NCBI GenBank assembly: GCA_002269645.1
Contig: NIVC01000162.1
Span: 310,001-374,000, forward strand
Source of the DNA: Macrostomum lignano
Taxonomy: Eukaryota
Length of the DNA stretch: 64,000 nt
Direction: 5' to 3'
This document shows, in pieces, positions 7,766 through 58,815 of the stretch. Position numbers and translations under genes: made by a program. The notes below the pieces were generated by a model. The model was not told the DNA's origin, made no database searches, and worked only from the letters and a program-made list of their open reading frames with translations. How positions within the stretch are numbered: position 1 is the stretch's first letter; every line of letters begins with the position of its first letter.

Positions 7766-9822
7766 AAAGAGGACAGTGAACATGAAGAGAAGACAGTGAA
7801 CATGAAGTGAGGACAGCTAGTGAACATGAAGAGAGGACAGTGAACATGAAGAGAGGACAGTGAACATGAAGAGAGGACAATGAAAATGAAGAGAGGGCAG
7901 TGAACATGAAGTGAGGACAGCTAGTGAACATGAAGAGAGGGCAGTGAACATGAAGAGAGGACAGTGAACATGAAGAGAGGACAGTGAACATGAAGAGAGG
8001 ACAGTGAACATGAAGAGAGGGCAGTGAACATGAAGAGAGGACAGTGAACATGAAGAGAATACAATGAACATGAAGAGAGGATAATGAACATGAAGAGAGG
8101 ACAGTGAACATGAAGAGAGGGCAGTGAACATGAAGACAGGACAGTGAACATGAAGAGAGGACGTGAACATGAAGAGAGGACAGTGAACATGAAGAGAGGA
8201 CAGTGAACATGAAGAGAGGGCAGTGAACATGAAGTGAGGACAGTGAACATGAAGAGAGGGCAGTGAACATGAAGAGAGGACAGTGAACATGAAGAGAGGG
8301 CAGTGAACATGAAGAGAGGACAGTGAACATGAAGAGAGGACAGTGAACATGAAGAGAGGACAGTGAACATGAAGAGAGGACAGTGAACATGAAGAGAGGA
8401 CAGTGAACATGAAGAGAGGACAATGAAAATGAAGAGAGGGCAGTGAACATGAAGTGAGGACAGCTAGTGAACATGAAGAGAGGGCAGTGAACATGAAGAG
8501 AGGACAGTGAACATGAAGAGAGGACAGTGAACATGAAGAGAGGACAGTGAACATGAAGAGAGGACAGTGAACATGAAGAGAGGACAGTGAACATGAAGAG
8601 AATACAATGAACATGAAGAGAGGATAATGAACATGAAGAGAGGACAGTGAACATGAAGAGAGGGCAGTGAACATGAAGACAGGACAGTGAACATGAAGAG
8701 AGGACGTGAACATGAAGAGAGGACAGTGAACATGAAGAGAGGACAGTGAACATGAAGAGAGGGCAGTGAACATGAAGTGAGGACAGTGAACATGAAGAGA
8801 GGGCAGTGAACATGAAGAGAGGACAGTGAACATGAAAAGAGGGCAGTGAACATGAAGAGAGGACAGTGAACATGAAGAGAGGGCAGTGAACATGAAGAGA
8901 GGACAGTGAACATGAAGAGAGGACAGTGAACATGAAGAGAGGACAGTGAACATGAAGAGAGGACAGTGAACATGAAGAGAGGACAGTGAACATGAAGAGA
9001 GGGCAGTGAACATGAAGAGAGGACAGTGAACATGAAGAGAGGACGTGAACTTGAAGAGAGGATAATGAACATGAAGAGAGGACAATGAACATGAAGAGAG
9101 GGCAGTGAACATGAAGAGAGGGCAGTGAACATGAAGACAGGACAGTGAACATGAAGAGAGGACGTGAACATGAAGAGAGGACAGTGAACATGAAGAGAGG
9201 ACAGTGAACATGAAGAGAGGACAGTGAACATGAAGAGAGGGCAGTGAACATGAAGACAGGACAGTGAACATGAAGAGAGGACGTGAACATGAAGAGAGGA
9301 CAGTGAACATGAAGAGAGGACAGTGAACATGAAGAGAGGACAGTGAACATGAAGAGAGGACAGTGAACATGAAGAGAGGGCAGTGAACATGAAGAGAGGA
9401 CAGTGAACATGAAGAGAGGACAGTGAACATGAAGAGAGGACGTGAACTTGAAGAGAGGATAATGAACATGAAGAGAGGACAATGAACATGAAGAGAGGGC
9501 AGTGAACATGAAGAGAGGGCAGTGAACATGAAGACAGGACAGTGAACATGAAGAGAGGACAGTGAACATGAAGAGAGGACAGTGAACATGAAGAGAGGGC
9601 AGTGAACATGAAGAGAGGGCAGTGAACATGAAGAGAGGACAGTGAACATGAAGAGAGGACAGTGAACATGAAGAGAGGACGTGAACTTGAAGAGAGGACA
9701 ATGAACATGAAGAGAGGACAGTGACCATGAAGAGACGACAGTGAACATGAAGTGAGGACAGTGAACATCAAGAGAGGACGTGAACATGAAGAGAGGACAA
9801 TGAACATGAAGAGAGGACAGTG
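7766..9822. repeat. 20-bp minisatellite, ~100 copies
   Basis: Unit cagtgaacatgaagagagga; it explains the 500-650 aa spurious ORFs. Confidence 0.98.
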
Positions 9823-12837: not shown

Positions 12838-13260
12838 ATCTTCACTCCTCCTTGTCACTCTCCTGACCCCCGTTGTCCCTAATTGATAACCACTATAATC
12901 ACTCTTCACTCCCCCTTGTCACTCTCTTGACTCCCGTTGTCCCTAATTGATAACCACTATAATCACTCTTCACTCCTCCTTGCCACTCTCTTGACTCCCG
13001 TTGTCCCTAATTGATAACCACTATAATCACTTTTCACTCCTTCTTGTCACTCTCTTGACCCCTTGTCACAATTTAAAACCACTATAATCACTCTTCACTC
13101 CTCCTTGTCACTCTCTTGACCCAGAGTGTCGCTAGTGACAAATGGAGGTCAGGAGAGTGAGTGACAAGCAGGAGTGAAGAATGACTAGTGGTTGTCAATA
13201 GTGACAATGGGGGTCAAGAGAGTGATAAGCAGGAGTGAGAGAGTGACTATACGGTTAGTG
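12838..13260. repeat. ~64-bp tandem array followed by inverted copies (foldback structure)
   Basis: About 4.5 forward units (cttcactcc..ttgtcactctcttgac..ccgttgtccctaattgataaccactataatca), then about 2 reverse-complement units from ~13135 (gggggtcaagagagtga..aagcaggagtga). Confidence 0.8.
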
Positions 13261-15585: not shown

Positions 15586-16650
15586 GTCTGTCACCCTCTC
15601 CACTGCCTGTCACCTCTCCACTGCCTGTCACCTCTCCACTGCCTGTCACCTCTCCACTGCCTGTCACCCTCTCCACTGCCTGTCACCTCTCCACTGCCTG
15701 TCACCCTCTCCACTGCCTGTCACCTCTCCACTGCCTGTCACCCTCTCCACTGCCTGTCACCCTCTCCACTGCCTGTCACCCTCTCCACTGCCTGTCACCT
15801 CTCCACTGCCTGTCACCCTCTCCACTGCCTGTCACCTCTCCACTGCCTGTCACCCTCTCCACTGCCTGTCACCCTCTCCACTGCCTGTCACCCTCTCCAC
15901 TGCCTGTCACCCTCTCCACTGCCTGTCACCCTCTCCACTGCCTGTCACCTCTCCACTGCCTGTCACACTCTCCACTGCCTGTCACCCTCTCCACTGCCTG
16001 TCACCCTCTCCACTGCCTGTCACCCTCTCCACTGCCTGTCACCCTCTCCACTGCCTGTCACCCTCTCCACTGCCTGTCACCCACTCCACTGCCTGTCACC
16101 TCTCCACTGCCTGTCACCCTCTCCACTGCCTGTCACCCTCTCCACTGCCTGTCACCCTCTCCACTGCCTGTCACCTCTCCACTGCCTGTCACCTCTCCAC
16201 TGCCTGTCACCTCTCCACTGCCTGTCACCCTCTCCACTGCCTGTCACCTCTCCACTGCCTGTCACCCTCTCCACTGCCTGTCACCCTCTCCACTGCCTGT
16301 CACCTCTCCACTGCCTGTCACACTCTCCACTGCCTGTCACCCTCTCCACTGCCTGTCACCCTCTCCACTGCCTGTCACCCTCTCCACTGCCTGTCACCCT
16401 CTCCACTGCCTGTCACCCACTCCACTGCCTGTCACCCTCTCCACTGCCTGTCACCCTCTCCACTGCCTGTCACCCTCTCCACTGCCTGTCACCCTCTCCA
16501 CTGCCTGTCACCTCTCCACTGCCTGTCACCTCTCCACTGCCTGTCACCCTCTCCACTGCCTGTCACCTCTCCACTGCCTGTCACCTCTCCACTGCCTGTC
16601 ACCCTCTCCACTGCCTGTCACCTTCTCCACTGCCTGTCACCCTCCCTCCA
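15586..16650. repeat. 18/19-bp minisatellite, ~57 copies
   Basis: Unit cacc(c)tctccactgcctgt. Confidence 0.97.
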
Positions 16651-17263
16651 TTGCCTGTCATCCTCTCCTCTTCTCTGCCATTCATTTTTGTGACTTTTGT
16701 ATCACAGATTTAACTCAAACGCTAGCGAACTTTATTTGTCAATCAAGTTATAGTTTAATACCCGCTATATACTACTTAGTAGAGACGTAATCAACTTCGT
16801 TATTGTAATCTTTAGCAATGTAATCACCCGTTGCCATGCAGTTGGGGTAAATAAAAAATGGATGTATCCAATTTAAGCATATGAAGAGGTGCTTTGTGTA
16901 AATCTTAAGCCGGTTGATCATCGCTTTTAATATCGCGATAGTTTACTAGAAATACCCCACCTATATTGCTTTGCGCGGCCAAATCAAATTTCCCAAGTTC
17001 TTAAAAGTGGCTTTACGAAAAAATTAAGTTTAGAAGGTGGAAGCTGGGCCTTTTTAATTTAATATTGTCTCCCAGACTGGGCCAGCCCTCCCATGGAGAT
17101 GCCATCTTCTCATCAGTCACGCCCGGAAAGATGCAGAATGCAATGTGCTGGGCTGCTTTCATTGTGCCGTCACGGACTGCAGAGTCAGAATAGGGAGCCT
17201 GGGTGATAAAGGGTGATGGTGGGAGTCAGTGCAACTTGCTTTGCTTCTCTAAAGCCGCTGAGT

Positions 17264-18539
<1,276 letters not shown>

Positions 18540-32642: not shown

Positions 32643-32803
32643 GACTATGGGGTCGCCACACACCCTCAATTAACCCAGCTTATGCTGGCTGAATTTTACA
32701 GCTGGGTGAACTGAAGCAATGCAGAGTTAGGTGTCTTGCTCAATTACACAAATTGTTCCGAGTGGATCGAGAATCGAACCCTGGACCTTTCAGTCGTGAG
32801 GTG
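32643..32803 (-). mobile_element. tRNA-derived SINE, partial copy
   Basis: Reverse complement of 33465-33620 (B box, gcaagacac.taactctgcattgcttcagttcacccagctgtaaaat). Confidence 0.85.
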
Positions 32804-33428
32804 CGCGTGCACTTTAAAATGTCGGGCACAGTTTCGGCTTAGGCCATTATCAGCTTGAAGGGCACTGATAGACAAGCAACGTGAGAAAAGCATCAATAAA
32901 TTAAGGCGTGTGTATCTCTTATAGACAGATCGATTGCTGTGGGGAATTTCTGAATCTCAAGTGTGGCTTCGAGGGGAGGTGGCGGGGCTGACGACAAGCA
33001 TCTCTCTAAAGGTACACGGGAAGCAGAGCATTCTAAGAAATGATAATTCTAGAATTCTAACGAGGCAGCCGCGTGATTCCAGCATAAATAGATGAGCTGC
33101 CATTAGACTAAAAGTCTGAGCGTAAACTTGCCGGGAAATTTCTCCCGCCACTGAGAATTTCTCAAAGTGTGACTTTTATCTTTATTCACAAACATAATGA
33201 GCACTTGCTCTAACTCTGAGAATAATCTCATGATTTAGCAAATTCTCCTGCTCAGAGTCTCAGGCTTTTGAGCAAACAACTCACTTTACTCAGGAGCCTT
33301 CCACCGTGCCTGATATTTCATAGATTGAAATGCTTTCAACTTTAGACCAAACATTTTCTGATATTTTCCGTGTTTCTAGTCCAATTTCTTTATGAAGAAA
33401 TCATTTAACTGCATGCATTGAGTTCAAT

Positions 33429-33727
33429 GGGGTTGTAGCCTAGTGGTTAGAGCGTCGGACTCACGACTGGAAGGTCGGAGGTTCGATTCCCGATCCACTC
33501 GGAAAAATTTGTGTCCTTAAGCAAGACACTTAACTCTGCATTGCTTCAGTTCGCCCAGCTGTAAAATGGGTGCCAGCATTAACTGGGGTAATTGAGGGTG
33601 TGTGTGGCGACCCCCAGTCCTTGGACTGAACAGCCGTACGCAGCCTTCAGATGCGCCGCGCAATGGCTGCGGCTGAGCTGTCGGTTGCACATCTGCCCAT
33701 TGGGCCAGGTGTAATCAATTATTATTA
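33429..33727 (+). mobile_element. tRNA-derived SINE, full length (~300 bp), CORE-like central domain
   Basis: Pol III A box (tagcctagtgg) and B box (ggttcgattcc); central gtgtccttaagcaagacacttaac...ctgtaaaatggg; GC-rich 3' body; (ATT)n tail. Three copies in the window. Confidence 0.88.
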
Positions 33728-34765: not shown

Positions 34766-35087
34766 TTAGATTAATTGACGGCGAGCAAGTTCTTGGTCAG
34801 TTGAGTATGATTGTGATTGAGTTAAAGTTCACAATGAATTTCCAGAGAGGAATAATGGGAGCAAGGAGATGTTTCTCTCTCTCTCAATATGTGCAGGTTC
34901 GGGAAAAGGATTCTCAAGGCAAATACCTGATTGGCTTCCCAAACGGCTGCTATGGCAATAAAAAACTCGAATGAATTCTTCCAGGTAATATTATCCCCAG
35001 CTAGGATAATAGCTTATTGTGACCGGCAGCTCAAATAACGAATTCAGTCCTCAGTCCTCAGTGCTCAGGCGAAACCAAACACCCGCT

Positions 35088-36230
35088 ATGAACAACCTGA
35101 CCTTGAAAGCGGTGAAAATCGGGTACGTGGAGAGTGCCATGCAGATTGTCAGGGACTGCCAGAGCGGAGACCCGTCCAGGTACCTCTTCTGCGTCATGTC
35201 TCACGTTATCGGCTCCGTGTCGGCCGTCCTGCTGCCAATCGTCGTTGTAGTCGGCACGCTGGGAAACATGATCGTGGCCCACGTCATGCTGAACCGCCTG
35301 AAGCCCCTCACCCGCCAGAATCTGTACCTGGGCTGCATCGCGATCGCCGATATTCTCAGCCTCGTCGTGATCGGAGTCTTCAACGGGTTTCTCACTAAGG
35401 GCCTGCCCTGGCTTACCAGAGGCCAATTCGGATTTTTCAGCTACAACCTGAGCGACGCCATGTGCAAGGTGTCTCGATACGCTCTGAACTTCTGCCACGT
35501 GCTGTCCTGCATGTGGATGCTGGTGCTGGTCACTGACCGAGTGCTGGTTGTACACCGACCGCTAGCCATGAAGAAGGTCGGGCTGCGCTGGGCGGCGAGG
35601 GCTCTGGCTGGAACACTCGTTCTGTCCGCTGTGATCGCCCTGCCGAACGGCATTCTGGTGGGTCACCAGACAGTCACCATGCATGACGGCACCATCCTCA
35701 TCTTCTGCTACCACCTGCACGAGACGCAGCTGTTCATGCTCGGCTACACGACATCGATGTCGAATCCGCCTCTGGTGTTCATCCTGCTGATGCTGGGCCT
35801 CAACTGCTTCCTGCTATCGCGGGTGGTTGCCGCAGTCCGGAAGCGTCGCATTCTGCAGAATCGCTCCGGCATCAACGCGCAGGACAGCAGCAGGAAGGAG
35901 TTATCAGGCACGGTGATCGTGCTTATCTTGGCCATTCTCTATCTCCTACTGCACACTCCTCTGCTGGTGAGTCGGCCCGCCATTGAAGTGTCGCTTTTCC
36001 TCCTGGACATGGCGGACAATTTGGACTTCCTCACTCTGCTGGCCAACCTCTTCTACTCCAGCTTGGTGATCAGTCTGATCAACCAGAGTCTCAACTTTTT
36101 TGTGCTTATGCGTCGCAGCCAACCGTTCAAGCAGTGCGTGTCGGCGGCGCTCTGCTGCGCCAGGAACAAAAGACCGAGGCGGTCAACATCTGAAATTGAG
36201 ATGGGCACCGTCACTGCTAGTGCGCTGTGA
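35088..36230 (+). CDS. Intronless class A (rhodopsin-like) orphan GPCR, paralog 1, 380 aa; peptide-receptor/srw-like
   Basis: Seven hydrophobic segments; TM1 GxLGN, TM2 LxxxAIAD, ECL1/TM3 Cys (MCK), DRY-equivalent VTDRV, TM5 NPP, TM6 LLHTP, TM7 NQSLNFFV. First ATG in the ORF is at 35088. Confidence 0.9.
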   Translation: MNNLTLKAVKIGYVESAMQIVRDCQSGDPSRYLFCVMSHVIGSVSAVLLPIVVVVGTLGNMIVAHVMLNRLKPLTRQNLYLGCIAIADILSLVVIGVFNGFLTKGLPWLTRGQFGFFSYNLSDAMCKVSRYALNFCHVLSCMWMLVLVTDRVLVVHRPLAMKKVGLRWAARALAGTLVLSAVIALPNGILVGHQTVTMHDGTILIFCYHLHETQLFMLGYTTSMSNPPLVFILLMLGLNCFLLSRVVAAVRKRRILQNRSGINAQDSSRKELSGTVIVLILAILYLLLHTPLLVSRPAIEVSLFLLDMADNLDFLTLLANLFYSSLVISLINQSLNFFVLMRRSQPFKQCVSAALCCARNKRPRRSTSEIEMGTVTASAL

Positions 36231-40632: not shown

Positions 40633-41778
40633 TCAGTTTACCGTTCCACTGGCCGTCGGCTGGTCTGTGTCGGACCTGGACTGCAAGTCTTTGCCAGCAG
40701 AGCAGCAGAACATGGCGAGAACGCATCTCTTGAAGGACTGGCTGCGGCGCATCAGCACGAAGAAGGTGAGGCTCTGGCTGACTACGCTGAACACGAGGGT
40801 CATGAAGAACAGGTCGGCCAGCAGTATAATGTAGTCCAGGTGAGTGGCCGTGTCCAGCACGAACTGGGAAATCTCCAGCAGCATCCGGCAGGCCAGCAGC
40901 GGGGCGTGCAGCGCCAGGTAGATTACGGCCAGGATCACCACAATGATGGTGCCGGAGATCTCCTTCGGATATTTCTGCTTCTGCGACTCTCCGCCGCCGG
41001 CGCCGAGAGACGACATGCTGCGGCGTTTGCGCACCGCGGCAGCCACGCGGGTGAGCAGGAAGCAGTCCAGAGCCAGGATCAACAGGATGATCAGCAGCGG
41101 CGGGTTGGACATCGCCGAGGTGTACACCATCATGAACAGCTGGTAATCTGGCAGGTGCGAGCACAGGATCACAGTCACCCCGTCTGGCCGGTACAGCAGG
41201 TGGTGCCCGGTAAGAAAACCGTTCGGCAGGGCGATCGCAGCGGACAGAACGAGTGTTCCAGCCAGAGCCCTCGCCGCCCAGCGCAGCCCGACCTTCTTCA
41301 TGGCCAGCGGTCGGTGAACAACCAGCACTCGGTCAGTGACCAGCACCAGCATCCACATACAGGACAGCACGTGGCAGAAGTTCAGAGCGTATCGAGACAC
41401 CTTGCACATGGCGTCGCTCAGGTTGTAGCTGAAAAATCCGAATTGGCCTCTAGTGAGCCAGGGCAGGCCCTTGACAAGGAACCCGTTGAAGACTCCGATC
41501 ACGACGAGGCTGAGAATATCGGCGATCGCGTTGCAGCCCAGGTACAGATTCTGGCGAGTGAGCGGTCGCTGGCGCTTCAGCATGACGTGGGCGATGACGA
41601 TGTTGCCCAGAACTCCAATGAAAAATATGATGGGGAGCAGTACGCCCGATACGGAGCCCGTGATGTTTGACTGGATGCACTGCATGTACCTTGATGGGTC
41701 ACCACTTAGGCAGTCTTGGACCATCCGGAATGCATTGGCTGAGTAGACAATTCGCGCCTCTTTGCCAGTGCCGTTCAT
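40633..41778 (-). CDS. Intronless class A orphan GPCR, paralog 2, 381 aa
   Basis: Same motifs as paralog 1; ATG (MNGTGKE) at 41778. Confidence 0.9.
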   Translation of the reverse strand: MNGTGKEARIVYSANAFRMVQDCLSGDPSRYMQCIQSNITGSVSGVLLPIIFFIGVLGNIVIAHVMLKRQRPLTRQNLYLGCNAIADILSLVVIGVFNGFLVKGLPWLTRGQFGFFSYNLSDAMCKVSRYALNFCHVLSCMWMLVLVTDRVLVVHRPLAMKKVGLRWAARALAGTLVLSAAIALPNGFLTGHHLLYRPDGVTVILCSHLPDYQLFMMVYTSAMSNPPLLIILLILALDCFLLTRVAAAVRKRRSMSSLGAGGGESQKQKYPKEISGTIIVVILAVIYLALHAPLLACRMLLEISQFVLDTATHLDYIILLADLFFMTLVFSVVSQSLTFFVLMRRSQSFKRCVLAMFCCSAGKDLQSRSDTDQPTASGTVN

Positions 41779-41865
41779 GATGGCTGTTTCTGGGACCAAA
41801 CAGGTGGGGCAAGTGACGTTTTCTGATGATTTTCATATGGTCTTTCTTGGAGCTTCTAGTATCAA

Positions 41866-43029: not shown

Positions 43030-45300
43030 TGTGTTTACAGACTTTCTAGCTCATGCTTCGTCTAATTCTGGTTGCCAACTTGCCCTCGGCCTTGACGACT
43101 TTTTCGTCAAGCGCGACCGCTGTTTTTCGTTACTTGTACGAAAAAAAGCCGACATAGGTTGCTTAAATTGCTACAACCTCAGCTACAACCATTGCTGGTT
43201 GCCAGAGAGCCTCCTGCTCTTACCCCCACATCTACAAAGTGAAGGGCTGTGGGCGGCAGCATCCTGCCCATCAGCACCAACATCCTGCTCAACTGCTCCA
43301 GCGCGGTCCTGATGACTCGCAGCCAATGCAGGAGACAAAAAACTGAGTGAATCTTATAGTGCTTTTAATCCTCCGCGTCAACCAAATTTTAACTCCTCTG
43401 CTGGTGATTTGAAGGCTTCCGCTTGGGAGAAACTGTTGCATAACGACCCCGACAAGCAGTATTTGATGAATGGTATTGTTCACGGCTTTCGTCTGGTTAA
43501 TAATAAGCAGCCTAATATTACTACTCTGAGAGATAATTACGCATCCGCTAGCCAGAATGCCGCCAAGGTGGAAGCTCAGCTTCTGGATGAGCTTCGGCTA
43601 GGCCGCTACACCATTACTCAGGAGCCTGTAAAAGTGAACCCAATTGGTGCCTTGCCTAAAGCCAACGGGAAAGTCCGCCCCATTCACGATCTGTCTGCTC
43701 CGCTCGGCGACTCTGTTAATGACTACTATCAGCAGGAGAAAGGCATCCGTTTTGGCTCCGTTCGAGAATTCAAAAAGCATTTAAAGCCCGGTTCCTTCAT
43801 GGACAAAGTGGATTTGAAAGATGCCTACAGGTCCGTCGCCATCAGTCCTGATGACCATTGTCTCACTGGTTTGAAGTGGCGCTTTCTAAGCCAGGACTGC
43901 GAGACTGCGATGTTCGACACCAGGCTGCCTTTCGGTTCGCGCGCCTCCTGTGAGATTTTTCACCGGCTCTCATCAGCGGTGAGACGCCACATGGTGCGGT
44001 GCGATTTTCATGCCACCGTCAACTACCTGGACGATTGGGCCATCGCAGCTGACACGGAGAGCGGGGCCCGGCGGGCCTATTGATTTTCTGACTAGTCTGC
44101 TGCAGTCGCTGGGGTTCACTATTAACTGGGATAAGTCGACTCAACCTGTGCAACAGTTGGTTTTCTGGGAATAAGCATCGATACGCGCAAGGGCACGATG
44201 AGTCTTCCTGCTGACAAAGCCAGTGAGATCGACAGCCTGCTGAGGGACTGCGGCCGCATGCAGACCATTCGCCTCAAGACTATGCAGAAGCTGGTGGGAA
44301 AGCTCGGCTGGCTGTGTCAAATCAATGGCGGCCTTTCCTTGGGCCGCTGATTGCCTCCATGGACTATGACTGCAAGGCTACAATTTTAGTTACGTCCGAG
44401 CTGAAAATGCATCTGGATTGGTGGCGGGAAGCGCTGGACTGGTTGCCGCCTAGTAGTCTATGGCCAAACTACCAGCAGCTCGCAGCGATCGAGTCTGGCA
44501 GCTGCACCAAAGGTGCGGCAGGCATTCTGAGGACCTCAACTGTCACTGACTGGGTCTACATCAACTGGGAGAGAGACTTTAATGACCAGTTCATGAATTT
44601 ACACATCAACTTCAAGGAAGCCATGGCTCTGCTGTTGACTGTTTTAAAGTTTCGCTCGACTCTGGTCAACACCAGGGTTGTGGTGTACTCTGATAGTACC
44701 GCCGCTGTCGGCATGATAAAGCGCCTGTCCTGCAGTCATCCCGATCTCCTTCGGATCTATCAAACTGTGGCTTTGTTGTCCATTCGTGATGGTATTTGTA
44801 TTGAAGCTTATCACCTGCCGGGTCGTATGCAAATTTCTAGTGACGCTGCGTCTCGTATGCTCGGTTCACGTGCTGAATTGCTCAACTTTTGCTTTCGTTT
44901 TTATGGTCACATCTGCCTTTTGCCTGACAATTTTGCCATGCACGCGCTCTCAGTGTCTTCTCGCGCCGCCCTCCGCTTTCAGGTCGCCTCCGCTCTCGGG
45001 ACGGGCCGCCCCAGAAGGCAGTCTCCGCCGGTCTGCTCTGCCGCCTCGCCCTCGCAGATAGTTCCTGGAAATCCTACTGCAGCCAATTCAAGGCCTGGCG
45101 TGCGTTCTGTGATCAGGCGGGCATCGGTCCGACCACCGCCAGCGAGAGCGACCTGTGCCAGTACGTCGTCCACCTGGTGCAATCACGAATTAGCGCCTTC
45201 TCAGCCCTGCGGTCCTACATCAATGTCGTCTCGGTGCTCCACCAGCTGGCCGGCTCGCCAGACCCAGCTGCAGTGCATTTTGCAGCGAAAACTATGTAGC
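43030..45300 (+). mobile_element. Decayed Ngaro/DIRS-type tyrosine-recombinase retrotransposon (gag remnant, RT, RNase H, truncated YR)
   Basis: RT: WEKLLHNDPDKQYLMNGIVHGFRL...RPIHDLS...KVDLKDAYRSV...RLPFG...NYLDDW (43409-44083). It continues through frameshifts (LGFTINWDKS..P, LGISIDT, KLVGKLGW). DIRS-type RNase H: HINFKEAMA...VYSDSTAAV...HLPG...DAASR (44314-44860). Overlapping YR N-terminus: LADSSWKSY...WRAFC...ALRSYINVVSVLHQLAGSPDP (45045-45265), then abrupt loss. Confidence 0.88.
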
Positions 45301-45516
45301 AGTCTCCAGTGAAATTTGCAGGATTTGAAAGCGCAAGCGTCCTTATAATGTAGTTCTCCAAGCCTCATATTCGTGTGCTTGTGTCTGTACAGTGGGTATC
45401 GCTGACTGCAAACTGACTGTCGTCCTGATTTGCCCTAAGTGCCCAAAAGCATCTCAGCAAACCATGCTACTACAAGTAGTGCAGTGTAACCTAATTTCAT
45501 CACTCTCTGAACTTAC

Positions 45517-48318: not shown

Positions 48319-49398
48319 TCAAGGTCGATAGTCAGCACTGCGACGCAACAGCACGGCTCTTCGAAACTGACGATTTCGGCGTAGCAGCACGAAGAAGCCG
48401 GTGCACTGGTTGAAGAGGCCAGTCACCGAGCTGCAAAACAGCATATTCACCACCAGGGATATGTAGTCCATGTTTTCAGCCACGTTCACTAGGCGGGCCG
48501 CCAGCTCAGCCCAGAGGCGGAACACAAGCATCGGAACGTTGAGAACCAGGTAGATAACGCTCATAATCATGACCACTAGAACTCCAGAGATCTCCGAGGT
48601 AGTCAGCTGTTGCTGCTGCTGTTGAGCCGCCGACAAAGACCGACGATTTCGGATTGATTGGATAACCCGCCGGAGCAGGAAACAGTTGAGAGCCAGGATA
48701 GTCAGGATGAGCAGCAGTGGCGGGTTGGTGAGCAAGATGGTGTACGGCATCATGAACAGCTGCGAGTTGGCGATTCGGTAGCAGTAGATGGCTGCCACCC
48801 CATTGCCCAGCGGCACTTGCAAGTAGCCCATCAGGAAAACGTTCGGCAGGGCGATCACAGCGGACAGAACGAATGTTCCAGCCAGAGCCCTCGCCGCCCA
48901 GCGCAGCCCGACCTTCTTCATGGCCAGCGGTCGGTGTACAACCAGCACTCGGTCAGTGACCAGCACCAGCAGCCACATGCAGGACAGCACGTGGCAGAAG
49001 TTCAGAGCGTATCGAGACACCTTGCACATGGCGTCGCTCAGGTTGTAGCTGAAAAATCCGAATTGGCCTCTGGTAAGCCAGGGTAGCCCCTTAGTGAGAA
49101 ACCCGTTGAAGACTCCGATCACGACGAGGCTGAGAATGTCAGCGATAGCGTTGAAGCTCAGGTACAGATTCTGGCGAGTGAGGTGCCTCAGACGGTTCAA
49201 CATGACGTGGACCACGATGATGTTGCCCACGAGTCCAGTGACGAAGATCGCTGGCAGTAGGATGCCAGACAGGATGCCCATCACGTTTGACACGGCGCAG
49301 TACAGTTTCCGGGACGGATCGCCGCTCATACAATCCCTTACCATCAACATGGCGTTGTCACCGAATACAACTCGCCTCACTTTTTGAGTGGCATTCAT
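48319..49398 (-). CDS. Intronless class A orphan GPCR, paralog 3, 359 aa
   Basis: Same 7TM motifs; short poly-Q in ICL3. Confidence 0.9.
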   Translation of the reverse strand: MNATQKVRRVVFGDNAMLMVRDCMSGDPSRKLYCAVSNVMGILSGILLPAIFVTGLVGNIIVVHVMLNRLRHLTRQNLYLSFNAIADILSLVVIGVFNGFLTKGLPWLTRGQFGFFSYNLSDAMCKVSRYALNFCHVLSCMWLLVLVTDRVLVVHRPLAMKKVGLRWAARALAGTFVLSAVIALPNVFLMGYLQVPLGNGVAAIYCYRIANSQLFMMPYTILLTNPPLLLILTILALNCFLLRRVIQSIRNRRSLSAAQQQQQQLTTSEISGVLVVMIMSVIYLVLNVPMLVFRLWAELAARLVNVAENMDYISLVVNMLFCSSVTGLFNQCTGFFVLLRRNRQFRRAVLLRRSADYRP

Positions 49399-50825: not shown

Positions 50826-51244
50826 GGCGCATGACCAAGACCGCCACATACCAAGACCGCCACAGCTCTTACTGACTATTGGAATTGAGAGGAAGCTACC
50901 AATCTTTCAGCATTGCTATTGGTTATGATGGGTTGTGGAGTTAGATAAGGAGGAAGTGTCCTAAGATTGGTCACTAATAAGATGAATAAGTGGCCCAAAA
51001 TGATTGCAAGTCAACCAGGGCAATTTTAACAATTCAAATTAAATGAAAAAAACAAGGAGCCTGGCTCACTCACCTACCTAGCCAGGCTAGCCTGCTCACC
51101 AGTTCTTCTCTCGTGGCCTTGTCTTGCTGGCTCTCCCTATCTTACCCCTCCTTAGCCCCATCCAATAACATGGCGAGCCAAATTCCTCCCTCCTAGCTCC
51201 CCCAAGTGTGGCGGTCTTGGTGTGTGGCGGTCTTGGTCCTACAC
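50826..51244. mobile_element. 419-bp MITE with 9-bp TSD (Mutator/MULE-like)
   Basis: TSD TGTCAATGA at 50817-50825 and 51245-51253; TIRs built from doubled accaagaccgccaca motifs, imperfect at the extreme ends. Confidence 0.85.
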
Positions 51245-52192: not shown

Positions 52193-52890
52193 CTCTTGTA
52201 AGCAGGCTTAAATGTATTCTATGGCATTAAAAGGCAAGAATAAGTGCCCAGCAGGCACAAAGGTCATGGTACAATTGGCACTTTCACCCATATTAGTGCC
52301 TTTAATGCTGTTTTATCAGTGTCCAGAGTTGTGACTAAAGTTTGCCTTTTGCTTCAGGACATGGTACCCATTTTTTGAAAAGGCATTTTTTGACATTTCT
52401 GGAATGCTTCAGGTGCTTCAAGCCATAGACTGCATGCATATCTGTATCTGGCACCCTAACAATGATAGTGGAATCTTCATTAATAGAAAGAGATATCACT
52501 TAATCAATGTTCAGTTGCTGAGAGTTGCTGAGATGCCATGGCTCAAGGGGAGTTGCTGAGATGCCATTGCTCAATTAGGGAGATGCTGAGATGCCATGGC
52601 TCAATGGGGATGCTAATATCTAGATATCTTAAACTAGAAAATGCTGTCAAGTGCAATGCCTTTTGTATTAGACATCTAAATACAATTATCAACTGTATTG
52701 TTGTTGAAAAATTTAAACTGTTCGAATTAAAGTGAAAAGAAATTGCTTCTTTTATTGAGTAGAGTAGGCCTATAAATGTCTTTTGGGTATAAGAAAGTTG
52801 TAATGCAGTTGATCTAAGCATATATGCAGTAAAAAATCTTGTTGCTAGTGTGTTTGCAAGAAATCCAATCCAAACTGCCACATCTTGCAG

Positions 52891-54054
52891 ACTGACCAAC
52901 CGCCACCCAGTCCGCCCTCATCGGGTGTCGGCAGCGGCGACCTCCAGCGTCGACCAGCCGGCAGCTCCGACAGTTTCCAGCATCCGTTTTTACCGCCGCA
53001 GCCGCCAGCTGCAGGGCTGGCCAGCGGCGGCATCGGCGGCTCTTCCGACCCCCTGCTGGGCCCCCTGCCGCCGCCCGTGCCGCCGCGGTCTGCCGCCGCC
53101 GCCAGTCCCGCCCTAGCAACCGGCTACTCGCCATTCGGCTATGGCGGCTTTGGCGCCGCCTCGGCCATGCCTTTCCTGCACAGTGGCTTCGGCGGTCTTG
53201 GCGGCGGCGGCGGCTTCGGCGGTCTTGGCGGCGGCGGCGGCGTCGGCGGTCTCGCTGGAGCGGCTGGCGGCGTCGGCCTGACCCAGCAGATGGAGGCCAG
53301 CCTCCGGCCGGCCTTCGAATCGCTGCACGCGGTCGTGTCCACCGTGTCGTCGGTGGCCGTCATGCTGGAGAGCTGCTACTTTGCCCTCAGCCAGTCTGTG
53401 CGCGCCCTGGCCGCGCTGGGCGACCAGTTTGGCCGGGCCGGTGCCGCTGTGCGCGCCCTGCTTGGTAGCGGCGTGCGGCGCCTGTGGCGTCTCATCAGCT
53501 TGGCGCTGTACGCGGCCGGCCTGACGGAGCGTCTGCCCGCGGCTCCGATCGCCTCGTCGGTCGGCGCTGCCGCCTCTCCCTCCGTTGCTGCCGCCGGACA
53601 GTCTGCAGGCGGCAGCGTCGGCGGCGGCAGCGGCGGCCGGACTCTGCTGTTCCTGGCCGCGGCCATGGCCGGCCCGCTGCTGCTGCTCCGCTTGGCCGCT
53701 GGCGCCAGCAGCCAGACATTGGCGGCGGCGGCTTTGGCCGACAACAATGACCCGTCGACTGCGTGGAGTCGCGGCGAAGGCGAGCACTACACGGCTAGGG
53801 CCCTGTACAGCTTCAACAGGACCGCCGCTGACGAGCTGACTGTTCAGGCCGGCGACCGATTGCTGGTGGCGCCGAAGCGGCTGCAGCCGGACGTGCCAAA
53901 CTGGCTGCTGGCCGCCTGCCCGGCTACCCGCGCCTCCGGCCTGGTGCCCGCCGCCTACGTCAAGGTGCTGTCCGCTGTGCGGCCTGCACCGCCGCCGCCG
54001 CCTCAGTCGAAGCCACCCTCAGATTGCGAAGACAAGGACGCCAAGATTGTGTAG
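52891..54054 (+). CDS. PEX13: Peroxin-13 (peroxisomal docking/translocon protein); 5' start not encoded locally
   Basis: Pro/Gly-rich N-terminus; Peroxin-13_N-like AFESLHAVVSTVSSVAVMLESCYFALSQSVRA; TM segment; C-terminal SH3 ARALYSF...DEL...GDRL..APK.LQP...WLLA...GLVPAAYVKVL. Acceptor ttgcag at 52885-52890; in-frame stop at 52846-52848; first in-frame ATG at 53167. Confidence 0.9.
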   Translation, partial: TDQPPPSPPSSGVGSGDLQRRPAGSSDSFQHPFLPPQPPAAGLASGGIGGSSDPLLGPLPPPVPPRSAAAASPALATGYSPFGYGGFGAASAMPFLHSGFGGLGGGGGFGGLGGGGGVGGLAGAAGGVGLTQQMEASLRPAFESLHAVVSTVSSVAVMLESCYFALSQSVRALAALGDQFGRAGAAVRALLGSGVRRLWRLISLALYAAGLTERLPAAPIASSVGAAASPSVAAAGQSAGGSVGGGSGGRTLLFLAAAMAGPLLLLRLAAGASSQTLAAAALADNNDPSTAWSRGEGEHYTARALYSFNRTAADELTVQAGDRLLVAPKRLQPDVPNWLLAACPATRASGLVPAAYVKVLSAVRPAPPPPPQSKPPSDCEDKDAKIV

Positions 54055-54231: not shown

Positions 54232-54474
54232 ATTGCTATTCATAAAGCTTTTCGTTTAGTAAATTAGGATTCTTTTGTTAATTTTATAGCCTACGTACAA
54301 TTGCGCATGTCTTGTGCCTAAAGATCATATAAATGTATGGAACAGCTTGACTTATTGGCTTCCGTATGAATCTGTTTTATGATTGTTAGGCACAGGACAT
54401 GTGCAATTGTACGTAGGCTATAAAATTAACAAAAATACTAATTTTCTAAACATAAAGCTCTAATGAATATCAAT
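54232..54474. mobile_element. Palindromic AT-rich MITE-like element with ~90-bp arms
   Basis: gttaattttatagcctacgtacaattgcgcatgtcttgtgcctaa (54277-54321) is inverted at 54386-54430 with 2 mismatches, and similarity extends outward. Same family as the copy at 1-170. Confidence 0.75.
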
Positions 54475-56066: not shown

Positions 56067-56783
56067 ATGGCGGATTCTGATGATGACGACTATAAGCCCA
56101 GTGTGCAATTGAAGATTGTTGTCGTTGGCGATGGATCTTCAGGAAAGACATCACTGACTTGCAGATATGCGCAGGATTTGTTCGGTAAAGACTATCGTCA
56201 AACGATAGGTGTTGACTTTTTCATGAAAAAAATCGTTCTACCTGGAAATACCGAAGTAACACTCCAAGTTTGGGACATCGGAGGCCAAACACTCGGTGGC
56301 AGTATGCTAGATAAGTACTTATACAACGCAGATGGAGTCGTCCTGGTGTACGACATTACAAACTTTTCCAGTTTCGAAAACCTGGAGGATTGGCTCACCT
56401 CTGCAAAGAAAATGATTGACCCGTCAAAAAATCCACACTTTGCTCTGGTCGGCAATAAAATGGACTTGGAGCATCTGCGAACAGTCAAAGCGGATCGGCA
56501 CGAGAAGCTCTGCCAAGAAAAGAATCTGTCTAGTCATTTCACATCTGCCAAGACCGGCGACTCTGTCAACGCCATGTTTATGAAGGTGGCCGCTGCAATC
56601 CTGAAGATCACCCTGCGTCAGAACGACATCGATCAGCAGAAGGGAGTTGTCAAAGCCGAAATTGGAAACGCGGCGTCGCGCAGCTCAGCTGGACAAGGCG
56701 CCACTCCAAGTCGCCCTTCTAACTCGCAATTGTCTAACACTAATGCGAATCAAGTGCAGACCAAAGCTTGCACATTGCTATGA
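56067..56783 (+). CDS. RAB28: Ras-related protein Rab-28, intronless, 238 aa
   Basis: [31 protein letters not shown] (the GGQ in G3 is typical of Rab28), GNKMDL, SAKTG, VVKAEI; C-terminal CaaX (CTLL). Confidence 0.95.
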
Positions 56784-58297
56784 CCTGCAGCCTGCACAGC
56801 CAAAACAATTGTGCTATTAACAGGGCTGGCTTTCATGTTGTCCCTTCAGTCTGTGCGAATTTGATTTTATAGTCTTGCATGCTTTCTTTTTCTGTGTTCT
56901 ATTTCATAATTATATTGGTATTTATCAAGTTATGGGCCAATTGATTTTTTTGGAATTCAAATCTAAGCAAAATGCTTTCAACATTGATTCACAATGCCAC
57001 AAATGCTTGTATGTGCATTTTAGTGCATTATTTTTTCCTGTAACTGTTCACAAATATCTGCACTAAAAATTCCAGCAACTCCTGATGGTAAGCAAAGCTC
57101 TGAAGAATGGAACAGAAAGCTTATTATTTTTTTAATTAAAATCCAATTGAAATCCAATAAATTTAGTTCCAGTGTCATTAAAAATTGTACTAACAGTCAA
57201 TACTAAGTCAAATTTCAGCCAAAGCTCACATGATTGGAATTCAATTTAATTAATTTCCTGCAAGTTATTTTTATTTATCTGTATTATACTAGAGCAGGCC
57301 AAATTCAATGTAGAAAAATGGCAAATAGATTTTACATTCCAAACTTAGAAGTTTGAACATATTCTTATGCCTTTGTAATTGTAGTAATATTTTTATGTAA
57401 TTAGAATGCATAAAATATTTATACAAATTTATGGTTGTCGCTTGATTTGCTAGATAAAAAAGAATTATAATATTTTAAAACTTTTACAGACAAATATTGA
57501 TTCTATGTATTGATTTAATAAGGTTAATCCTGCATGTGGTTTGTACTACGTTAAACTGGTGTTGATTGCATAAATAAATTTTGTACAATCTGATGGGTGT
57601 AATAATTGCAATACCTACTCAACTGCATAAAAAGATTAACAAAGCAACAAATTTGCAGTTTTTTTTATTCGTTTAGTTATTTGATCCGGTAAAAAAGCAA
57701 TAACTATCCAAAGATTAATTTAAATGTATATTTTTCTAACTGTGGTTTGGTTTTTTCAACAAAAACCACAGGTGACCACCCAGCTGAGGCGCAGGCAGTC
57801 AAGCATGGCGCATGATTGGTAAAGAAATTAATAAATTCATGTCACTAGACGGTGGAGAGTGCAGGAGCCACTGTCGACAATGACGATGGACTTTATGGGG
57901 AAAAACAAGGTTAGTCGTGCGGACAGGCGCATGCAAATATTAATATCTGAGGCTAAAAGTTTGAAGAAATAAAATAATACTAGCAAACAGTTTCTAAAGA
58001 GGCTCGCAATTAATAAATAAATTAACAGGTGAAAACAATGCATCTGTGTACAAAATCAGCTCTTGTGTGGGCGCTCTGTGTGTACATCCAAATGTACATT
58101 ACATTGTATACGAGTCCAATGCATCTCAAGATGTAGCGTTTAACAGTGCAGTCAAATGTAACTTTGGTAACGCACAATACAATGTACAAATCAGAGTCGA
58201 GGTAAGGTGCATCGTTTGATAAAAGCCAGAAGAATGAAAGCGAAAACGAACATTCGCATGCTTTTCTTTAATAATACCAAATTGCAAATTTATTAAT

Positions 58298-58346
58298 CTT
58301 TGCGCGACGTGTTTCGCCGAACAATTGGCATCTTCAGGCAACAATA
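58298..58346 (-). ncRNA. Minimal type I hammerhead ribozyme motif with intact core
   Basis: Minus strand reads uauuguugc-CUGAAGA-U-GCC-aauuguuc-GGC-GAAAC-AC-GUC-gcgcaaag: conserved core, extra U after A9, 3-bp helix II, palindromic ACGU helix III. Predicted cleavage between 58306 and 58305. Helix I is weak. Confidence 0.7.
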
Positions 58347-58409
58347 GGTGCAGAGAGATGGAAGCCAAATATGATGCAAGTATGCAAAATTACCATCTCT
58401 CTGCATCTA

Positions 58410-58458
58410 TTATTGCCCCTGAAGATGCCAATTGTTGGGCGAAACACTTCGCGCAAAG
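58410..58458 (+). ncRNA. Second, mutated hammerhead motif (mirror copy)
   Basis: CUGAAGA-U-GCC-aauuguug-GGC-GAAAC-AC-UUC: the G16.2 to U change breaks helix III and the ACGU palindrome. Confidence 0.55.
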
Positions 58459-58554
58459 ATTAATAAATTTGCAATTTGGTATTATTAAAGAAAAGCATGC
58501 GAATATTTGTTTACGCTTTCGTTCTTCTGGCTTTATTGTACAAATCAGTGCGTA

Positions 58555-58815
58555 TGTAATGTACATCTAATTTGCAGATCAATGTACATCCACATTGTAC
58601 ATCTAATGTACATATCAATGTACATCCACATTGTACATCTAATGTACATATCAATGTACATCCACATTGTACATCTAATGTACATCCACATTGTACATCT
58701 AATGTACATATCAATGTACATCCACATTGTACATCTAATGTACATATCAAGTGTACATCTAATGTACCTATCAATATCAATTTATTTAGATTAGATGTAC
58801 ATTAAAAACATATCA
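58555..58815. repeat. TGTACA-based 12/24/36-bp repeat
   Basis: aatgtacatatc / aatgtacatccacattgtacatct units. Confidence 0.9.

What the first reader, a model, noticed from the sequence alone, without database searches (positions are those of the whole stretch)
58183..58548. Mirror-image pair of hammerhead ribozymes in a TSD-flanked palindrome
Seen: two ~145-bp inverted arms diverge from a ~30-nt spacer. Each arm reads outward as CUGAAGA-U-GCC-loop-GGC-GAAAC-AC-NUC, then ...AATAAA. The left arm (minus strand) keeps GUC and the ACGU palindrome; the right arm has UUC. The 342-bp unit is bracketed by TGTACAAATCAG. Established: minimal type I hammerheads lacking a stable helix III occur in Penelope-like element terminal repeats and are thought to cleave as dimers, and PLEs often carry inverted terminal-repeat copies. 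Inference: this is an ORF-less, ribozyme-only insertion. A transcript through it from either strand contains one sense hammerhead and its near-perfect antisense, so it would fold into a long dsRNA hairpin that silences the ribozyme or feeds small-RNA pathways. If similar units are dispersed, they would be a non-autonomous palindromic ribozyme retroelement family distinct from tandem retrozymes.
Basis: partly seen in the sequence, partly recalled or inferred. Interest (0 to 1): 0.8.

Follow-up and report, generated by a model that had tools for sequence, protein, structure and literature searches.

The report
Relic Penelope-element hammerhead pair, head-to-head
This 342-bp palindrome in the flatworm Macrostomum lignano is best read as an old, ORF-less leftover of a Penelope-like retrotransposon insertion, made of two inverted copies of the element's 3' end that each carry a minimal hammerhead ribozyme motif; this layout is already known for these elements.

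Summary
Arms of 143 and 144 bp (58219-58361 on the minus strand, 58393-58536 on the plus strand) flank a 31-nt spacer. Each reads outward as CUGAAGA-U-GCC..GGC-GAAAC-AC-(G/U)UC. An exact 12-bp direct repeat brackets the 342-bp unit and occurs nowhere else in the window.

Rfam finds no hammerhead here. It also finds none in 12 control loci that hold ORF-linked Penelope-like element (PLE) hammerheads, so that negative is uninformative. A covariance model built only from 24 ORF-linked PLE hammerheads ranks the two arms first and second in the 64 kb (22.4 and 21.7 bits, E about 0.002; next hit 12.2 bits).

The layout matches published PLE insertions:
- head-to-head, 5'-truncated copies with their 3' ends outward;
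- a 24-nt one-sided "tail";
- a short target-site duplication (TSD);
- a satellite target.

A metagenomic PLE (L014) shows the same anatomy with its ORF still present.

The arms differ by about 8%. The plus-strand motif is damaged and the minus-strand motif is weak. No PLE ORF lies in the window. A duplicated contig carries the same insertion, so it is not an assembly artefact, but no empty site was found.

The reading as a new palindromic ribozyme retroelement family is not supported. Genome-wide copy number could not be tested.

The parts
58183..58194 (+). Left copy of the 12-bp target-site duplication TGTACAAATCAG
   Evidence: Exact 12-mer. It is one of only two matches in the window at up to 1 mismatch, both at the element's boundaries.
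58195..58218 (-). One-sided 24-nt extension (candidate PLE 'tail') between the TSD and the left arm. In the sense of the left copy it reads CAAACGATGCACCTTACCTCGACT.
   Evidence: It has no counterpart at the right end, where the arm abuts the TSD. A one-sided 30-40-bp tail is a published PLE hallmark. Comparator L014 has a tail of about 29 nt at one end only, and that tail is shared with the related copy L013.
58219..58361 (-). Left arm: a 5'-truncated copy of the PLE 3' terminus (pLTR fragment), with its sense on the minus strand and its 3' end outward
   Evidence: Inverted repeats I1 and I2, the arm alignment and the orientation of the R1 hit.
58300..58343 (-). Minimal type I hammerhead motif, the better-preserved copy. 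C3 is at 58337 and C17 at 58306, so the predicted cut lies between 58306 and 58305.
   Evidence: It scores 21.7 bits, E 0.0024, with model R1 built from ORF-linked PLE hammerheads. It is the only full-descriptor hit in the window.
58362..58392 (.). 31-nt non-palindromic junction between the two copies
   Evidence: The stretches inward of the two arms do not align with each other. In the predicted hairpin this segment is the loop.
58393..58536 (+). Right arm: a second 5'-truncated copy of the same 3' terminus, with its sense on the plus strand and its 3' end abutting the TSD
58413..58456 (+). Degenerate hammerhead motif. C3 is at 58419 and C17 at 58450. Position 16.2 is U instead of G, and two extra C lie before C3.
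   Evidence: It scores 22.4 bits, E 0.0015, with R1. It fails the strict descriptor on helix I. The differences from the left arm are listed.
58537..58548 (+). Right copy of the 12-bp target-site duplication
58558..58767 (.). TGTACAT satellite (12/36-nt period), the insertion target context and not part of the element
   Evidence: TRF rows and direct-repeat family D1. With the element and one TSD copy removed, the TSD continues the 12-nt periodicity of the satellite.

Best explanation
The palindrome is a decayed, ORF-less product of one integration event of a Penelope-like retroelement (PLE) in the Macrostomum lignano genome.

Proposed origin (inferred from published PLE biology, not shown here):
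1. The PLE GIY-YIG endonuclease made a staggered double-strand cut at the edge of a TGTACAT satellite. The stagger later became the 12-bp TSD.
2. Reverse transcription of the 3' end of PLE RNA produced two short cDNA copies with their 3' ends facing outward. These cover the pLTR region that carries the minimal hammerhead.
3. The two copies arose either because both cleaved strands primed synthesis (as the Anolis Poseidon protein PAc does in vitro) or because one cDNA snapped back and primed on itself.
4. One copy started at the distal of the two adjacent internal start sites and so keeps a 24-nt tail. The other started at the proximal site.
5. The copies were joined head-to-head across 31 nt.

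A second route gives the same end product: loss of the ORF by recombination between the two direct pLTRs of a full insertion that also had an inverted pLTR.

In active PLEs the hammerhead is thought to process multimeric element RNA as a dimer. Here it is most likely inactive. Any read-through transcript would fold into a hairpin of about 143 bp rather than a ribozyme.
For: Shown here:
- Model R1, built only from 24 hammerheads lying next to PLE RT/GIY-YIG ORFs (23 from metagenomic loci, one from Poseidon_Ac), puts the two arms at ranks 1 and 2 in the window (22.4 and 21.7 bits; next hit 12.2).
- Held-out PLE hammerheads that lie next to ORFs score 18-34 bits with R1, so these two hits fall in that range.
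- The sense strands point outward.
- The TSD 12-mer is unique to the two boundaries.
- There is a one-sided 24-nt extension.
- Comparator L014 has 89-nt inverted hammerhead arms around a 5'-truncated PLE ORF, an 8-9-bp TSD, and a tail of about 29 nt at one end only. The related copy L013 confirms that the tail is element sequence.
- 7 of 80 PLE loci carry an opposite-strand hammerhead just upstream of the ORF.
- The same insertion sits in the duplicated contig NIVC01000127.1 with 1 difference in 366 nt, inside 7.5 kb of flank that is 97.9% identical.

From the literature:
- PLE insertions are 5'-truncated, often have an adjacent inverted copy and a one-sided 30-40-bp tail, and tend to insert into microsatellites (PMC8557442).
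- In Adineta vaga the TSDs are 8-10 bp and a 31-bp tail sits on one inverted pLTR (PMC3846280).
- PAc extends both strands and starts reverse transcription at two adjacent internal sites (PMC11167929).
- Opposite-strand min-hammerhead pairs occur in S. mansoni (PMC4209133).
Against: - No PLE RT or GIY-YIG remnant lies in the 64 kb or in L001. tblastn with 10 PLE proteins gave only noise.
- No second copy of the arm is in the window. Linkage to a Macrostomum PLE family could not be tested, because no tool here searches that genome.
- The ribozyme is weak for its class. Helix II is 3 bp, a bulge, then 2 A-U pairs, against 4-7 bp in nearly all (22 of 24) of the training motifs. Helix I is about 3 bp. 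The helix III insert CACG is not palindromic.
- R1 E-values are rough, and the two arm hits are copies of one another, so they count as one observation.
- The tail is 24 nt, shorter than the published 30-40.
- The motif descriptor used to pick the training set enforces some base pairing, so part of the covariation seen is circular.
Confidence: 0.78

Rival explanations
1. One reading: the unit is a member of a self-propagating, non-autonomous palindromic hammerhead retroelement family, separate from tandem retrozymes. PLE enzymes would mobilise it in trans as a hairpin-forming RNA.
For: - The unit is ORF-less, flanked by a TSD and compact at 342 bp.
- In A. vaga, pLTR sequences alone were enough for trans-mobilisation of unrelated inserts (PMC3846280).
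- A 2026 preprint argues that vertebrate non-LTR retrozymes derive from PLE pLTRs.
Against: - There is no other copy in the 64 kb window.
- The only other copy seen is the same insertion in a duplicated chromosome block.
- The arms differ by about 8%, with changes inside the ribozyme.
- The asymmetry (a tail on one side only) is what a single PLE integration produces, and L014 shows it with its ORF still present.
- A hairpin of about -220 kcal/mol would be a poor template and a poor ribozyme.
Confidence: 0.07
2. It is a foldback or MITE-type DNA transposon, or another palindromic duplication, and its arms contain a hammerhead-like string by chance.
For: - The window holds other inverted-repeat elements: 54273-54434, 32693-33567 and 13095-13238.
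- Rfam reports no hammerhead here, only weak hairpin-type miRNA matches far below threshold.
- A loose CTGANGA..CGAAAC string also occurs by chance at 13536.
Against: - The Rfam negative is uninformative. Rfam also misses every ORF-linked PLE hammerhead in 12 control loci.
- The PLE-trained model separates the arms from background by 10 bits.
- The full descriptor gave 0 hits in 300 shuffles.
- The inverted repeat does not reach the TSD on the left side, which is not what terminal inverted repeats do.
- From general knowledge, a 12-bp TSD is longer than that of the common cut-and-paste superfamilies.
Confidence: 0.09
3. It is a host hairpin-RNA or small-RNA gene, either unrelated to PLEs or derived from one, kept for its double-stranded RNA.
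For: - The predicted hairpin is very stable on both strands.
- It is retained in both duplicated contigs.
- It lies between the 3' ends of two convergent genes, a Rab-like gene ending at 56783 and a phosphorylase-kinase-beta-like gene ending near 60470, so read-through transcription is conceivable.
Against: - Retention in both contigs is expected from the recent duplication: the flanks are 97.9% identical.
- The miRNA model scores are 28-32 bits against gathering scores of 58-100.
- The arms have accumulated mismatches and indels without compensation.
- No expression data were available.
Confidence: 0.04
4. It is an assembly or long-read fold-back artefact.
For: Mlig_3_7 is a PacBio-based assembly of a highly repetitive genome (PMC5730564).
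Against: - The same palindrome sits inside collinear flanks in two separately assembled contigs that differ by about 2%.
- Its arms differ by about 8%, whereas a fold-back read would give identical arms.
- It has a TSD.
Confidence: 0.01

Closest known systems
[quoted passage not shown]
   Same: - The CUGANGA / GAAA / UH core is present.
- There is an unpaired nucleotide between A9 and G10.1.
- G10.1 pairs with C11.1.
- There is almost no helix III, so activity is expected only as a dimer.
- Helix I is short.
- As described for the D. virilis variant, there is a bulge in helix II and a 2-nt insert in helix III.
- The host is a flatworm. Opposite-strand pairs 100-700 bp apart are already described for S. 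mansoni.
   Different: - Helix II is shorter, at 3+2 bp against 6-8 bp.
- The helix III insert CACG is not palindromic. It is one transition away from CGCG or CAUG, both seen in PLE loci L015, L074 and L077.
- No consensus family or ORF linkage could be shown for this genome.
Canonical PLE insertion architecture: inverted 5'-truncated copy or inverted pLTR, one-sided tail, short TSD
   Same: - The copies are head-to-head with their 3' ends outward.
- The tail is on one end only.
- The TSD is about 10 bp.
- The insertion sits in repetitive DNA.
   Different: - Both copies are cut down to about 145-175 nt, so no ORF lies between them.
- The tail is 24 nt, not 30-40.
- The junction is a 31-nt non-palindromic stretch.
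Poseidon_Ac (PAc) hammerhead of Anolis carolinensis (PMC11167929)
   Same: The string is nearly the same: CUGAGGA-U-GCC...GGGC-GAAAC-GUC in PAc against CUGAAGA-U-GCC...GGGC-GAAAC-AC-UUC here. In both, A9-U-G10.1 forms an AUG.
   Different: - In PAc that AUG starts the 846-aa ORF. Here the frame stops after 12 codons, as it does in PLE loci L074 and L077.
- PAc has no insert in helix III.
Metazoan non-LTR retrozymes (Cervera and de la Pena 2020, PMC7229834)
   Same: They are ORF-less, small, carry a type I hammerhead and are probably PLE-dependent.
   Different: Retrozymes are direct tandem repeats of 150-450 bp with canonical hammerheads that have loop-loop contacts, and they give circular RNAs. 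This unit is an inverted pair with minimal motifs and no tandem copy.
Twin-priming inversions of LINE-1 (recalled from general knowledge, not checked here)
   Same: Both strands of a staggered break prime reverse transcription, which gives inverted 5'-truncated segments within one TSD.
   Different: The enzyme family differs, and L1 inversions are not head-to-head copies of the same 3' end. This is offered only as a mechanistic analogy.

Membership tests
PLE-type minimal hammerhead ribozyme | Catalytic core C3-U4-G5-A6-N7-G8-A9 ... G12-A13-A14 ... U16.1-H17 | tested here: met
   Both arms carry CUGAAGA, GAAA and U-C at the right spacing.
PLE-type minimal hammerhead ribozyme | Unpaired nucleotide between A9 and G10.1, and a G10.1-C11.1 pair (hallmarks listed in PMC4209133) | tested here: met
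   There is an extra U at 58330 and at 58426, and helix II is closed by G-C in both arms. All 24 ORF-linked comparators have the extra nucleotide, and 21 of 24 have G-C with the other three G-U.
PLE-type minimal hammerhead ribozyme | Palindromic 15.2-16.2 pair and loop 3, which allow a dimeric helix III | tested here: inconclusive
   - Left arm: A15.1-C-A-C-G-U16.1 keeps C15.2-G16.2, but the inner AC is not self-complementary.
- Right arm: 16.2 is U, so the pair is lost.
- Comparators have CG, CGCG, CAUG or UGCA at this position.
PLE-type minimal hammerhead ribozyme | Helices I (4-5 bp) and II (6-8 bp) of the usual size | tested here: not met
   Helix I is about 3 bp. Helix II is 3 bp, a 1-nt bulge, then 2 A-U pairs. 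This is weaker than all but two of the 24 comparators. A bulged helix II and a 2-bp helix I are, however, described for the D. virilis variant.
PLE-type minimal hammerhead ribozyme | Significant score against a structure-and-sequence profile of ORF-linked PLE hammerheads | tested here: met
   With R1 and filters off the arms score 22.4 and 21.7 bits (E 0.0015 and 0.0024, rough values), and the next hit scores 12.2 bits. Held-out PLE hammerheads score 18-34 bits.
PLE-type minimal hammerhead ribozyme | Membership of a within-genome consensus family with compensatory changes | not testable with these tools
   - No tool here searches the M. lignano assembly by DNA.
- The only other copy seen is the duplicated locus L001.
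- Exact-ORF look-ups found nothing.
- Scans of the prokaryotic-genome and viral collections found nothing.
PLE-type minimal hammerhead ribozyme | Self-cleavage, as a dimer | not testable with these tools
   This needs in vitro transcription. Even confirmed metazoan PLE min-hammerheads cleave poorly in vitro.
Rfam hammerhead families (type I/II/III, HH9, HH10) | A match to the curated covariance models | tested here: not met
   There is no hammerhead match at gathering score on the window or at E<=10 on 58000-58700. The control shows this is uninformative: Rfam reports nothing at E<=1 in 12 loci with ORF-linked PLE hammerheads that score 34-51 bits with R1.
Penelope-like element insertion | Head-to-head inverted 5'-truncated copies or pLTRs with the hammerhead near the outward 3' ends | tested here: met
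   The arm orientation follows from the R1 hits. The same layout appears in L014 and L037, and in five more loci of the 80.
Penelope-like element insertion | An optional 30-40-bp tail at one end only | tested here: met
   A 24-nt extension is present on the left only, a little short of the published range. Whether it is element sequence could not be verified here. It was verified for L014 through L013.
Penelope-like element insertion | A short target-site duplication | tested here: met
   The 12-bp exact repeat is unique to the two boundaries. Published values are 8-10 bp, and L014 has 8-9 bp.
Penelope-like element insertion | An RT plus GIY-YIG ORF in the unit or in related copies | tested here: not met
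   There is no PLE ORF remnant in the window or in L001. Related copies elsewhere in the genome could not be searched. This lowers the claim to a PLE-derived fragment, not a PLE.
Non-LTR retrozyme | Direct tandem repeats of 150-450 bp, each with a canonical type I hammerhead | tested here: not met
   TRF finds no tandem array of the unit. blastn finds only the inverted partner. The motif is minimal, not canonical.
MITE / foldback DNA transposon | Terminal inverted repeats that run right up to the TSD on both sides | tested here: not met
   The left arm stops 24 nt short of the TSD.

The most novel reading that the evidence does not exclude
The inverted hammerhead pair might be more than debris. 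It could be a mobilisable hairpin derivative of a PLE pLTR that amplifies in trans in Macrostomum. It could also be a PLE-derived hairpin-RNA locus whose double-stranded transcript feeds small-RNA silencing of the parent PLE family. Either reading would link ribozyme-bearing retroelement ends to RNA-interference triggers.
Probability: 0.07. Interest if true: 0.6.

Novelty: new member of a known kind. Interest (0 to 1): 0.25.

Why it matters
The gain is mainly in annotation and method.
- It documents PLE-type minimal hammerheads in Macrostomum lignano. The full-text library searched here holds no paper that mentions both hammerhead ribozymes and this genus.
- It gives a compact natural example of the PLE signature of two-sided priming or snap-back synthesis plus a tail, which fits the recent in vitro work on PAc.
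- It shows that Rfam's hammerhead models miss this whole class, and that a small model built from ORF-linked PLE motifs recovers them.

It does not reveal a new kind of element.

Tried and rejected
- Rfam at gathering and at E<=10 gave no hammerhead. I rejected this as evidence after the control.
- Exact look-up of eight ORFs overlapping the element, intended to find other copies through called genes, found none in the collection.
- A protein search with Poseidon_Ac, intended to reach Macrostomum PLE ORFs, listed no Macrostomum protein among the best 120 hits. The GenBank annotation of Mlig_3_7 excluded transcripts that overlap repeats, so this route was probably closed from the start.
- Two further protein searches used window ORFs: an RNase-H-like ORF at 44314-45312 and a 7tm_1 ORF at 48319-49398.
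- Exact-pattern scans of the prokaryotic-genome and viral collections with arm and ribozyme strings found 0 matches.
- tblastn of 10 PLE proteins against the window and L001 gave only noise.
- MFE and cofold predictions of monomer and dimer were not informative, because min-hammerheads, including the confirmed comparators, do not fold into the active shape at minimum free energy.
- The idea that the AUG formed by A9-U-G10.1 marks the ORF start, as in PAc, was dropped. The frame closes after 12 codons here and after 10-25 codons in PLE loci L074 and L077.
- The weak R1 hits at 57094, 13530 and 32813 (10-12 bits, E about 1-3) were treated as background.
Full report
**Source of the window.** The Rab-like protein encoded at 56067-56783 is found on exactly two contigs of assembly GCA_002269645.1. 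One of them, NIVC01000162.1, holds the window as bases 310001-374000. NIVC01000000 is the Mlig_3_7 assembly of the flatworm Macrostomum lignano, line DV1. It is PacBio-based, about 13-15% tandem repeats, and has 180 Mb of non-repetitive duplicated blocks at 95% identity or more because of extra chromosomes (PMC5730564). The window fits that description: 45.7% GC, 76 tandem-repeat rows, and intronless GPCR, Pex13-like, Rab-like and COMM-domain ORFs.

**The observation.** The palindrome is real.
- The repeat finder gives arms 58222-58338/58418-58534 (117 nt, 95%) and 58337-58361/58393-58417 (25 nt, 92%).
- A global alignment extends them to 58219-58361 (sense on the minus strand) and 58393-58536 (sense on the plus strand). 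Identity is about 92%, with a 2-nt and a 1-nt indel, around a 31-nt spacer that does not pair with itself.
- The minus-strand arm reads CUGAAGA-U-GCC-AAUUGUUC-GGC-GAAA-CACG-UC, with C17 at 58306.
- The plus-strand arm reads CUGAAGA-U-GCC-AAUUGUUG-GGC-GAAA-CACU-UC, with C17 at 58450 and two extra C before C3.
- TGTACAAATCAG lies at 58183-58194 and 58537-58548 and nowhere else in the window, even with one mismatch allowed. It is therefore not just a unit of the neighbouring TGTACAT satellite.
The right arm abuts the repeat directly, while the left arm is separated from it by 24 nt (58195-58218).

**Is the motif a hammerhead?**
- Rfam reports nothing at gathering score for the window. At E<=10 on 58000-58700 it gives only weak hairpin-type miRNA matches.
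- To judge that negative I collected 80 metagenomic loci that encode PLE RT/GIY-YIG proteins. A simple descriptor extracted about two dozen distinct hammerheads lying next to those ORFs.
- Rfam finds no hammerhead at E<=1 in twelve of these loci. It does not detect this class, so its silence on the window means nothing.
- The PLE motifs all carry the extra nucleotide after A9. Twenty-one of 24 have G10.1-C11.1. They end in GAAA-CG-UY or GAAA-(CGCG/CAUG/UGCA)-UC.
- Covariance model R1 was built from 23 of them plus the published Poseidon_Ac motif, with nothing from the window.
- Run on the whole window with filters off, R1 ranks the two arms first and second: 22.4 bits (E 0.0015) and 21.7 bits (E 0.0024). 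The next hit scores 12.2 bits.
- PLE hammerheads that were not in the training set score 18-34 bits, so the two arms fall in that range.
- The strict descriptor hits only the minus-strand copy in the real window and nothing in 300 local shuffles. My analytic estimate is about 0.005 chance hits per window.
- Limits: the two arms are copies of each other, so this is one observation. The R1 E-values are rough.
- The motif is at the weak end of the class. Helix I is about 3 bp, helix II is 3 bp, a bulge and two A-U pairs, and the helix III insert CACG is not palindromic.
- CACG is one transition from the CGCG or CAUG seen in loci L015, L074 and L077.
- A bulged helix II, a 2-nt helix III insert and a very short helix I are described for the Drosophila virilis Penelope variant.

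**The anatomy is that of a PLE insertion.** The literature describes PLE insertions as follows.
- They are heavily 5'-truncated, often have an inverted 5'-truncated copy immediately adjacent, and carry a 30-40-bp tail at one end only. The hammerhead lies in the pLTR near the 3' end, and insertion favours microsatellites (PMC8557442).
- In Adineta vaga the TSDs are 8-10 bp, a 31-bp tail sits on one of the inverted pLTRs, and head-to-head is the most frequent inverted arrangement (PMC3846280).
- In Schistosoma mansoni, pairs of min-hammerheads 100-700 bp apart on opposite strands were already noted (PMC4209133).

The window element shows each of these features: 3' ends outward, a 12-bp TSD, a one-sided 24-nt extension, and a satellite target.

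- Locus L014 has 89-nt, 100%-identical inverted arms (2911-2999 and 5037-5125). Each arm starts at its hammerhead, and together they enclose a 5'-truncated PLE ORF.
- L014 also has an 8-9-bp TSD (ATCAACTA) and about 29 nt of extra sequence at the right end only.
- That extra sequence is shared with the related copy L013, so it belongs to the element and is a true tail.
- Seven of the 80 loci carry an opposite-strand hammerhead just upstream of the ORF.

The window element is the same structure with both copies cut down to about 145-175 nt.

**How it most likely arose and what it does.**
- Purified Poseidon protein cleaves and extends both DNA strands. It starts reverse transcription at two adjacent internal sites, and the distance between them corresponds to the tail (PMC11167929).
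- I infer that a staggered cut at the satellite edge was followed by reverse transcription of the PLE RNA 3' end from both sides, or by snap-back self-priming as proposed for A. vaga.
- One copy started at the distal site and the other at the proximal site. The two short cDNAs were then joined across 31 nt.
- Recombination between the direct pLTRs of a once-complete insertion that also had an inverted pLTR would give the same product. I cannot separate these routes.
- The insertion is old. The arms differ by about 8%, and the changes fall inside the ribozyme as often as outside it.
- In contrast, the copy on the duplicated contig differs at one base in 366, within flanks that are 97.9% identical.
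- That second copy rules out an assembly artefact. It also means no empty site is available.
- No PLE ORF remnant is present in the window or in L001.
- A read-through transcript of either strand would fold into a nearly perfect hairpin of about 143 bp (-222.3 and -216.0 kcal/mol; z -26 and -25). The hammerhead fold would lose out to that hairpin.
- The idea that the hairpin could feed small-RNA pathways is reasonable but untested.
- The element lies between the 3' ends of two convergent genes.

**What could not be done.** No tool here searches the M. lignano genome by DNA, so the following remain open: copy number, linkage to a Macrostomum PLE, covariation within a family, and whether the tail is element sequence. 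Several indirect routes were tried and failed: exact ORF look-ups, three protein searches, and scans of the prokaryotic-genome and viral collections.

**Verdict.** The hammerhead and PLE attribution is well supported. The claim of a new palindromic ribozyme retroelement family is not supported. This is a new instance, in a species where it seems not to have been reported, of a known kind of structure. Interest is low to moderate.

Noticed in passing
window 32693-32800 and 33460-33567: An inverted pair of 108-nt arms (90% complementary, 659 nt apart) carries tRNA-like sequence, with a T-arm GGTTCGATTCC preceded by GTAGCCTAGTGGTTAGAGCG. It looks like two tRNA-derived SINE-like copies in opposite orientation. 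ARAGORN calls no tRNA in the window.
   Followed up: partly
window 54273-54434: A 162-bp palindrome (60-nt arms, 92% complementary, 42-nt spacer) has no hammerhead-model hit and no obvious TSD. It is MITE-like.
   Followed up: partly
window 50834-50864 and 51206-51237: The duplicated 16-mer ACCAAGACCGCCACAT (two copies) faces its reverse complement (two copies) about 340 bp away. These may be the ends of a small inverted-repeat element.
   Followed up: no
window 1-64000: Minisatellite density is extreme, with 76 TRF rows. Examples are a 20-mer x102 at 7768-9822, (TAGA)n x319 at 17264-18539 and a 19-mer x58 at 15588-16668. Long ORFs listed across these arrays are repeat artefacts.
   Followed up: no
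window 35019-36230 (+), 40633-41799 (-), 48319-49398 (-): Three intronless rhodopsin-family (7tm_1) ORFs form a local cluster. The large protein collection returned no match to the third one, not even to itself, so these may be unannotated.
   Followed up: partly
window 52885-54054; L001 7151-8320: A single-exon Pex13-like ORF (Peroxin-13_N plus SH3) is called as a gene on the duplicated contig but not on the window's contig. The two copies are only 92% identical here, against about 98% in the neighbouring sequence.
   Followed up: no
window 1384-1545 and 2588-2628: There are G-rich GGGTTCGGG / GGGTTT-type degenerate short repeats, loosely telomere-like.
   Followed up: no
L014 2911-5165; L013 5151-5271: This metagenomic PLE has 89-nt perfect inverted hammerhead arms, an 8-9-bp TSD and a one-sided tail of about 29 nt that a related copy confirms as element sequence. 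It is a clean natural illustration of the PLE tail.
   Followed up: yes
loci L003-L082: Rfam release 15 detects none of the ORF-linked PLE minimal hammerheads in the 12 loci tested. The small model R1 finds 46 hits at E<=0.1 across the 80 loci, nearly all just downstream of the ORF or inverted just upstream of it.
   Followed up: yes
window 58425-58463 and 58293-58331 (minus strand); L074, L077: A9, the extra U and G10.1 form an AUG, as in Poseidon_Ac, where that AUG starts the ORF. Here and in two metagenomic PLE families the frame closes after 10-25 codons, so the overlap is not a general start codon.
   Followed up: yes
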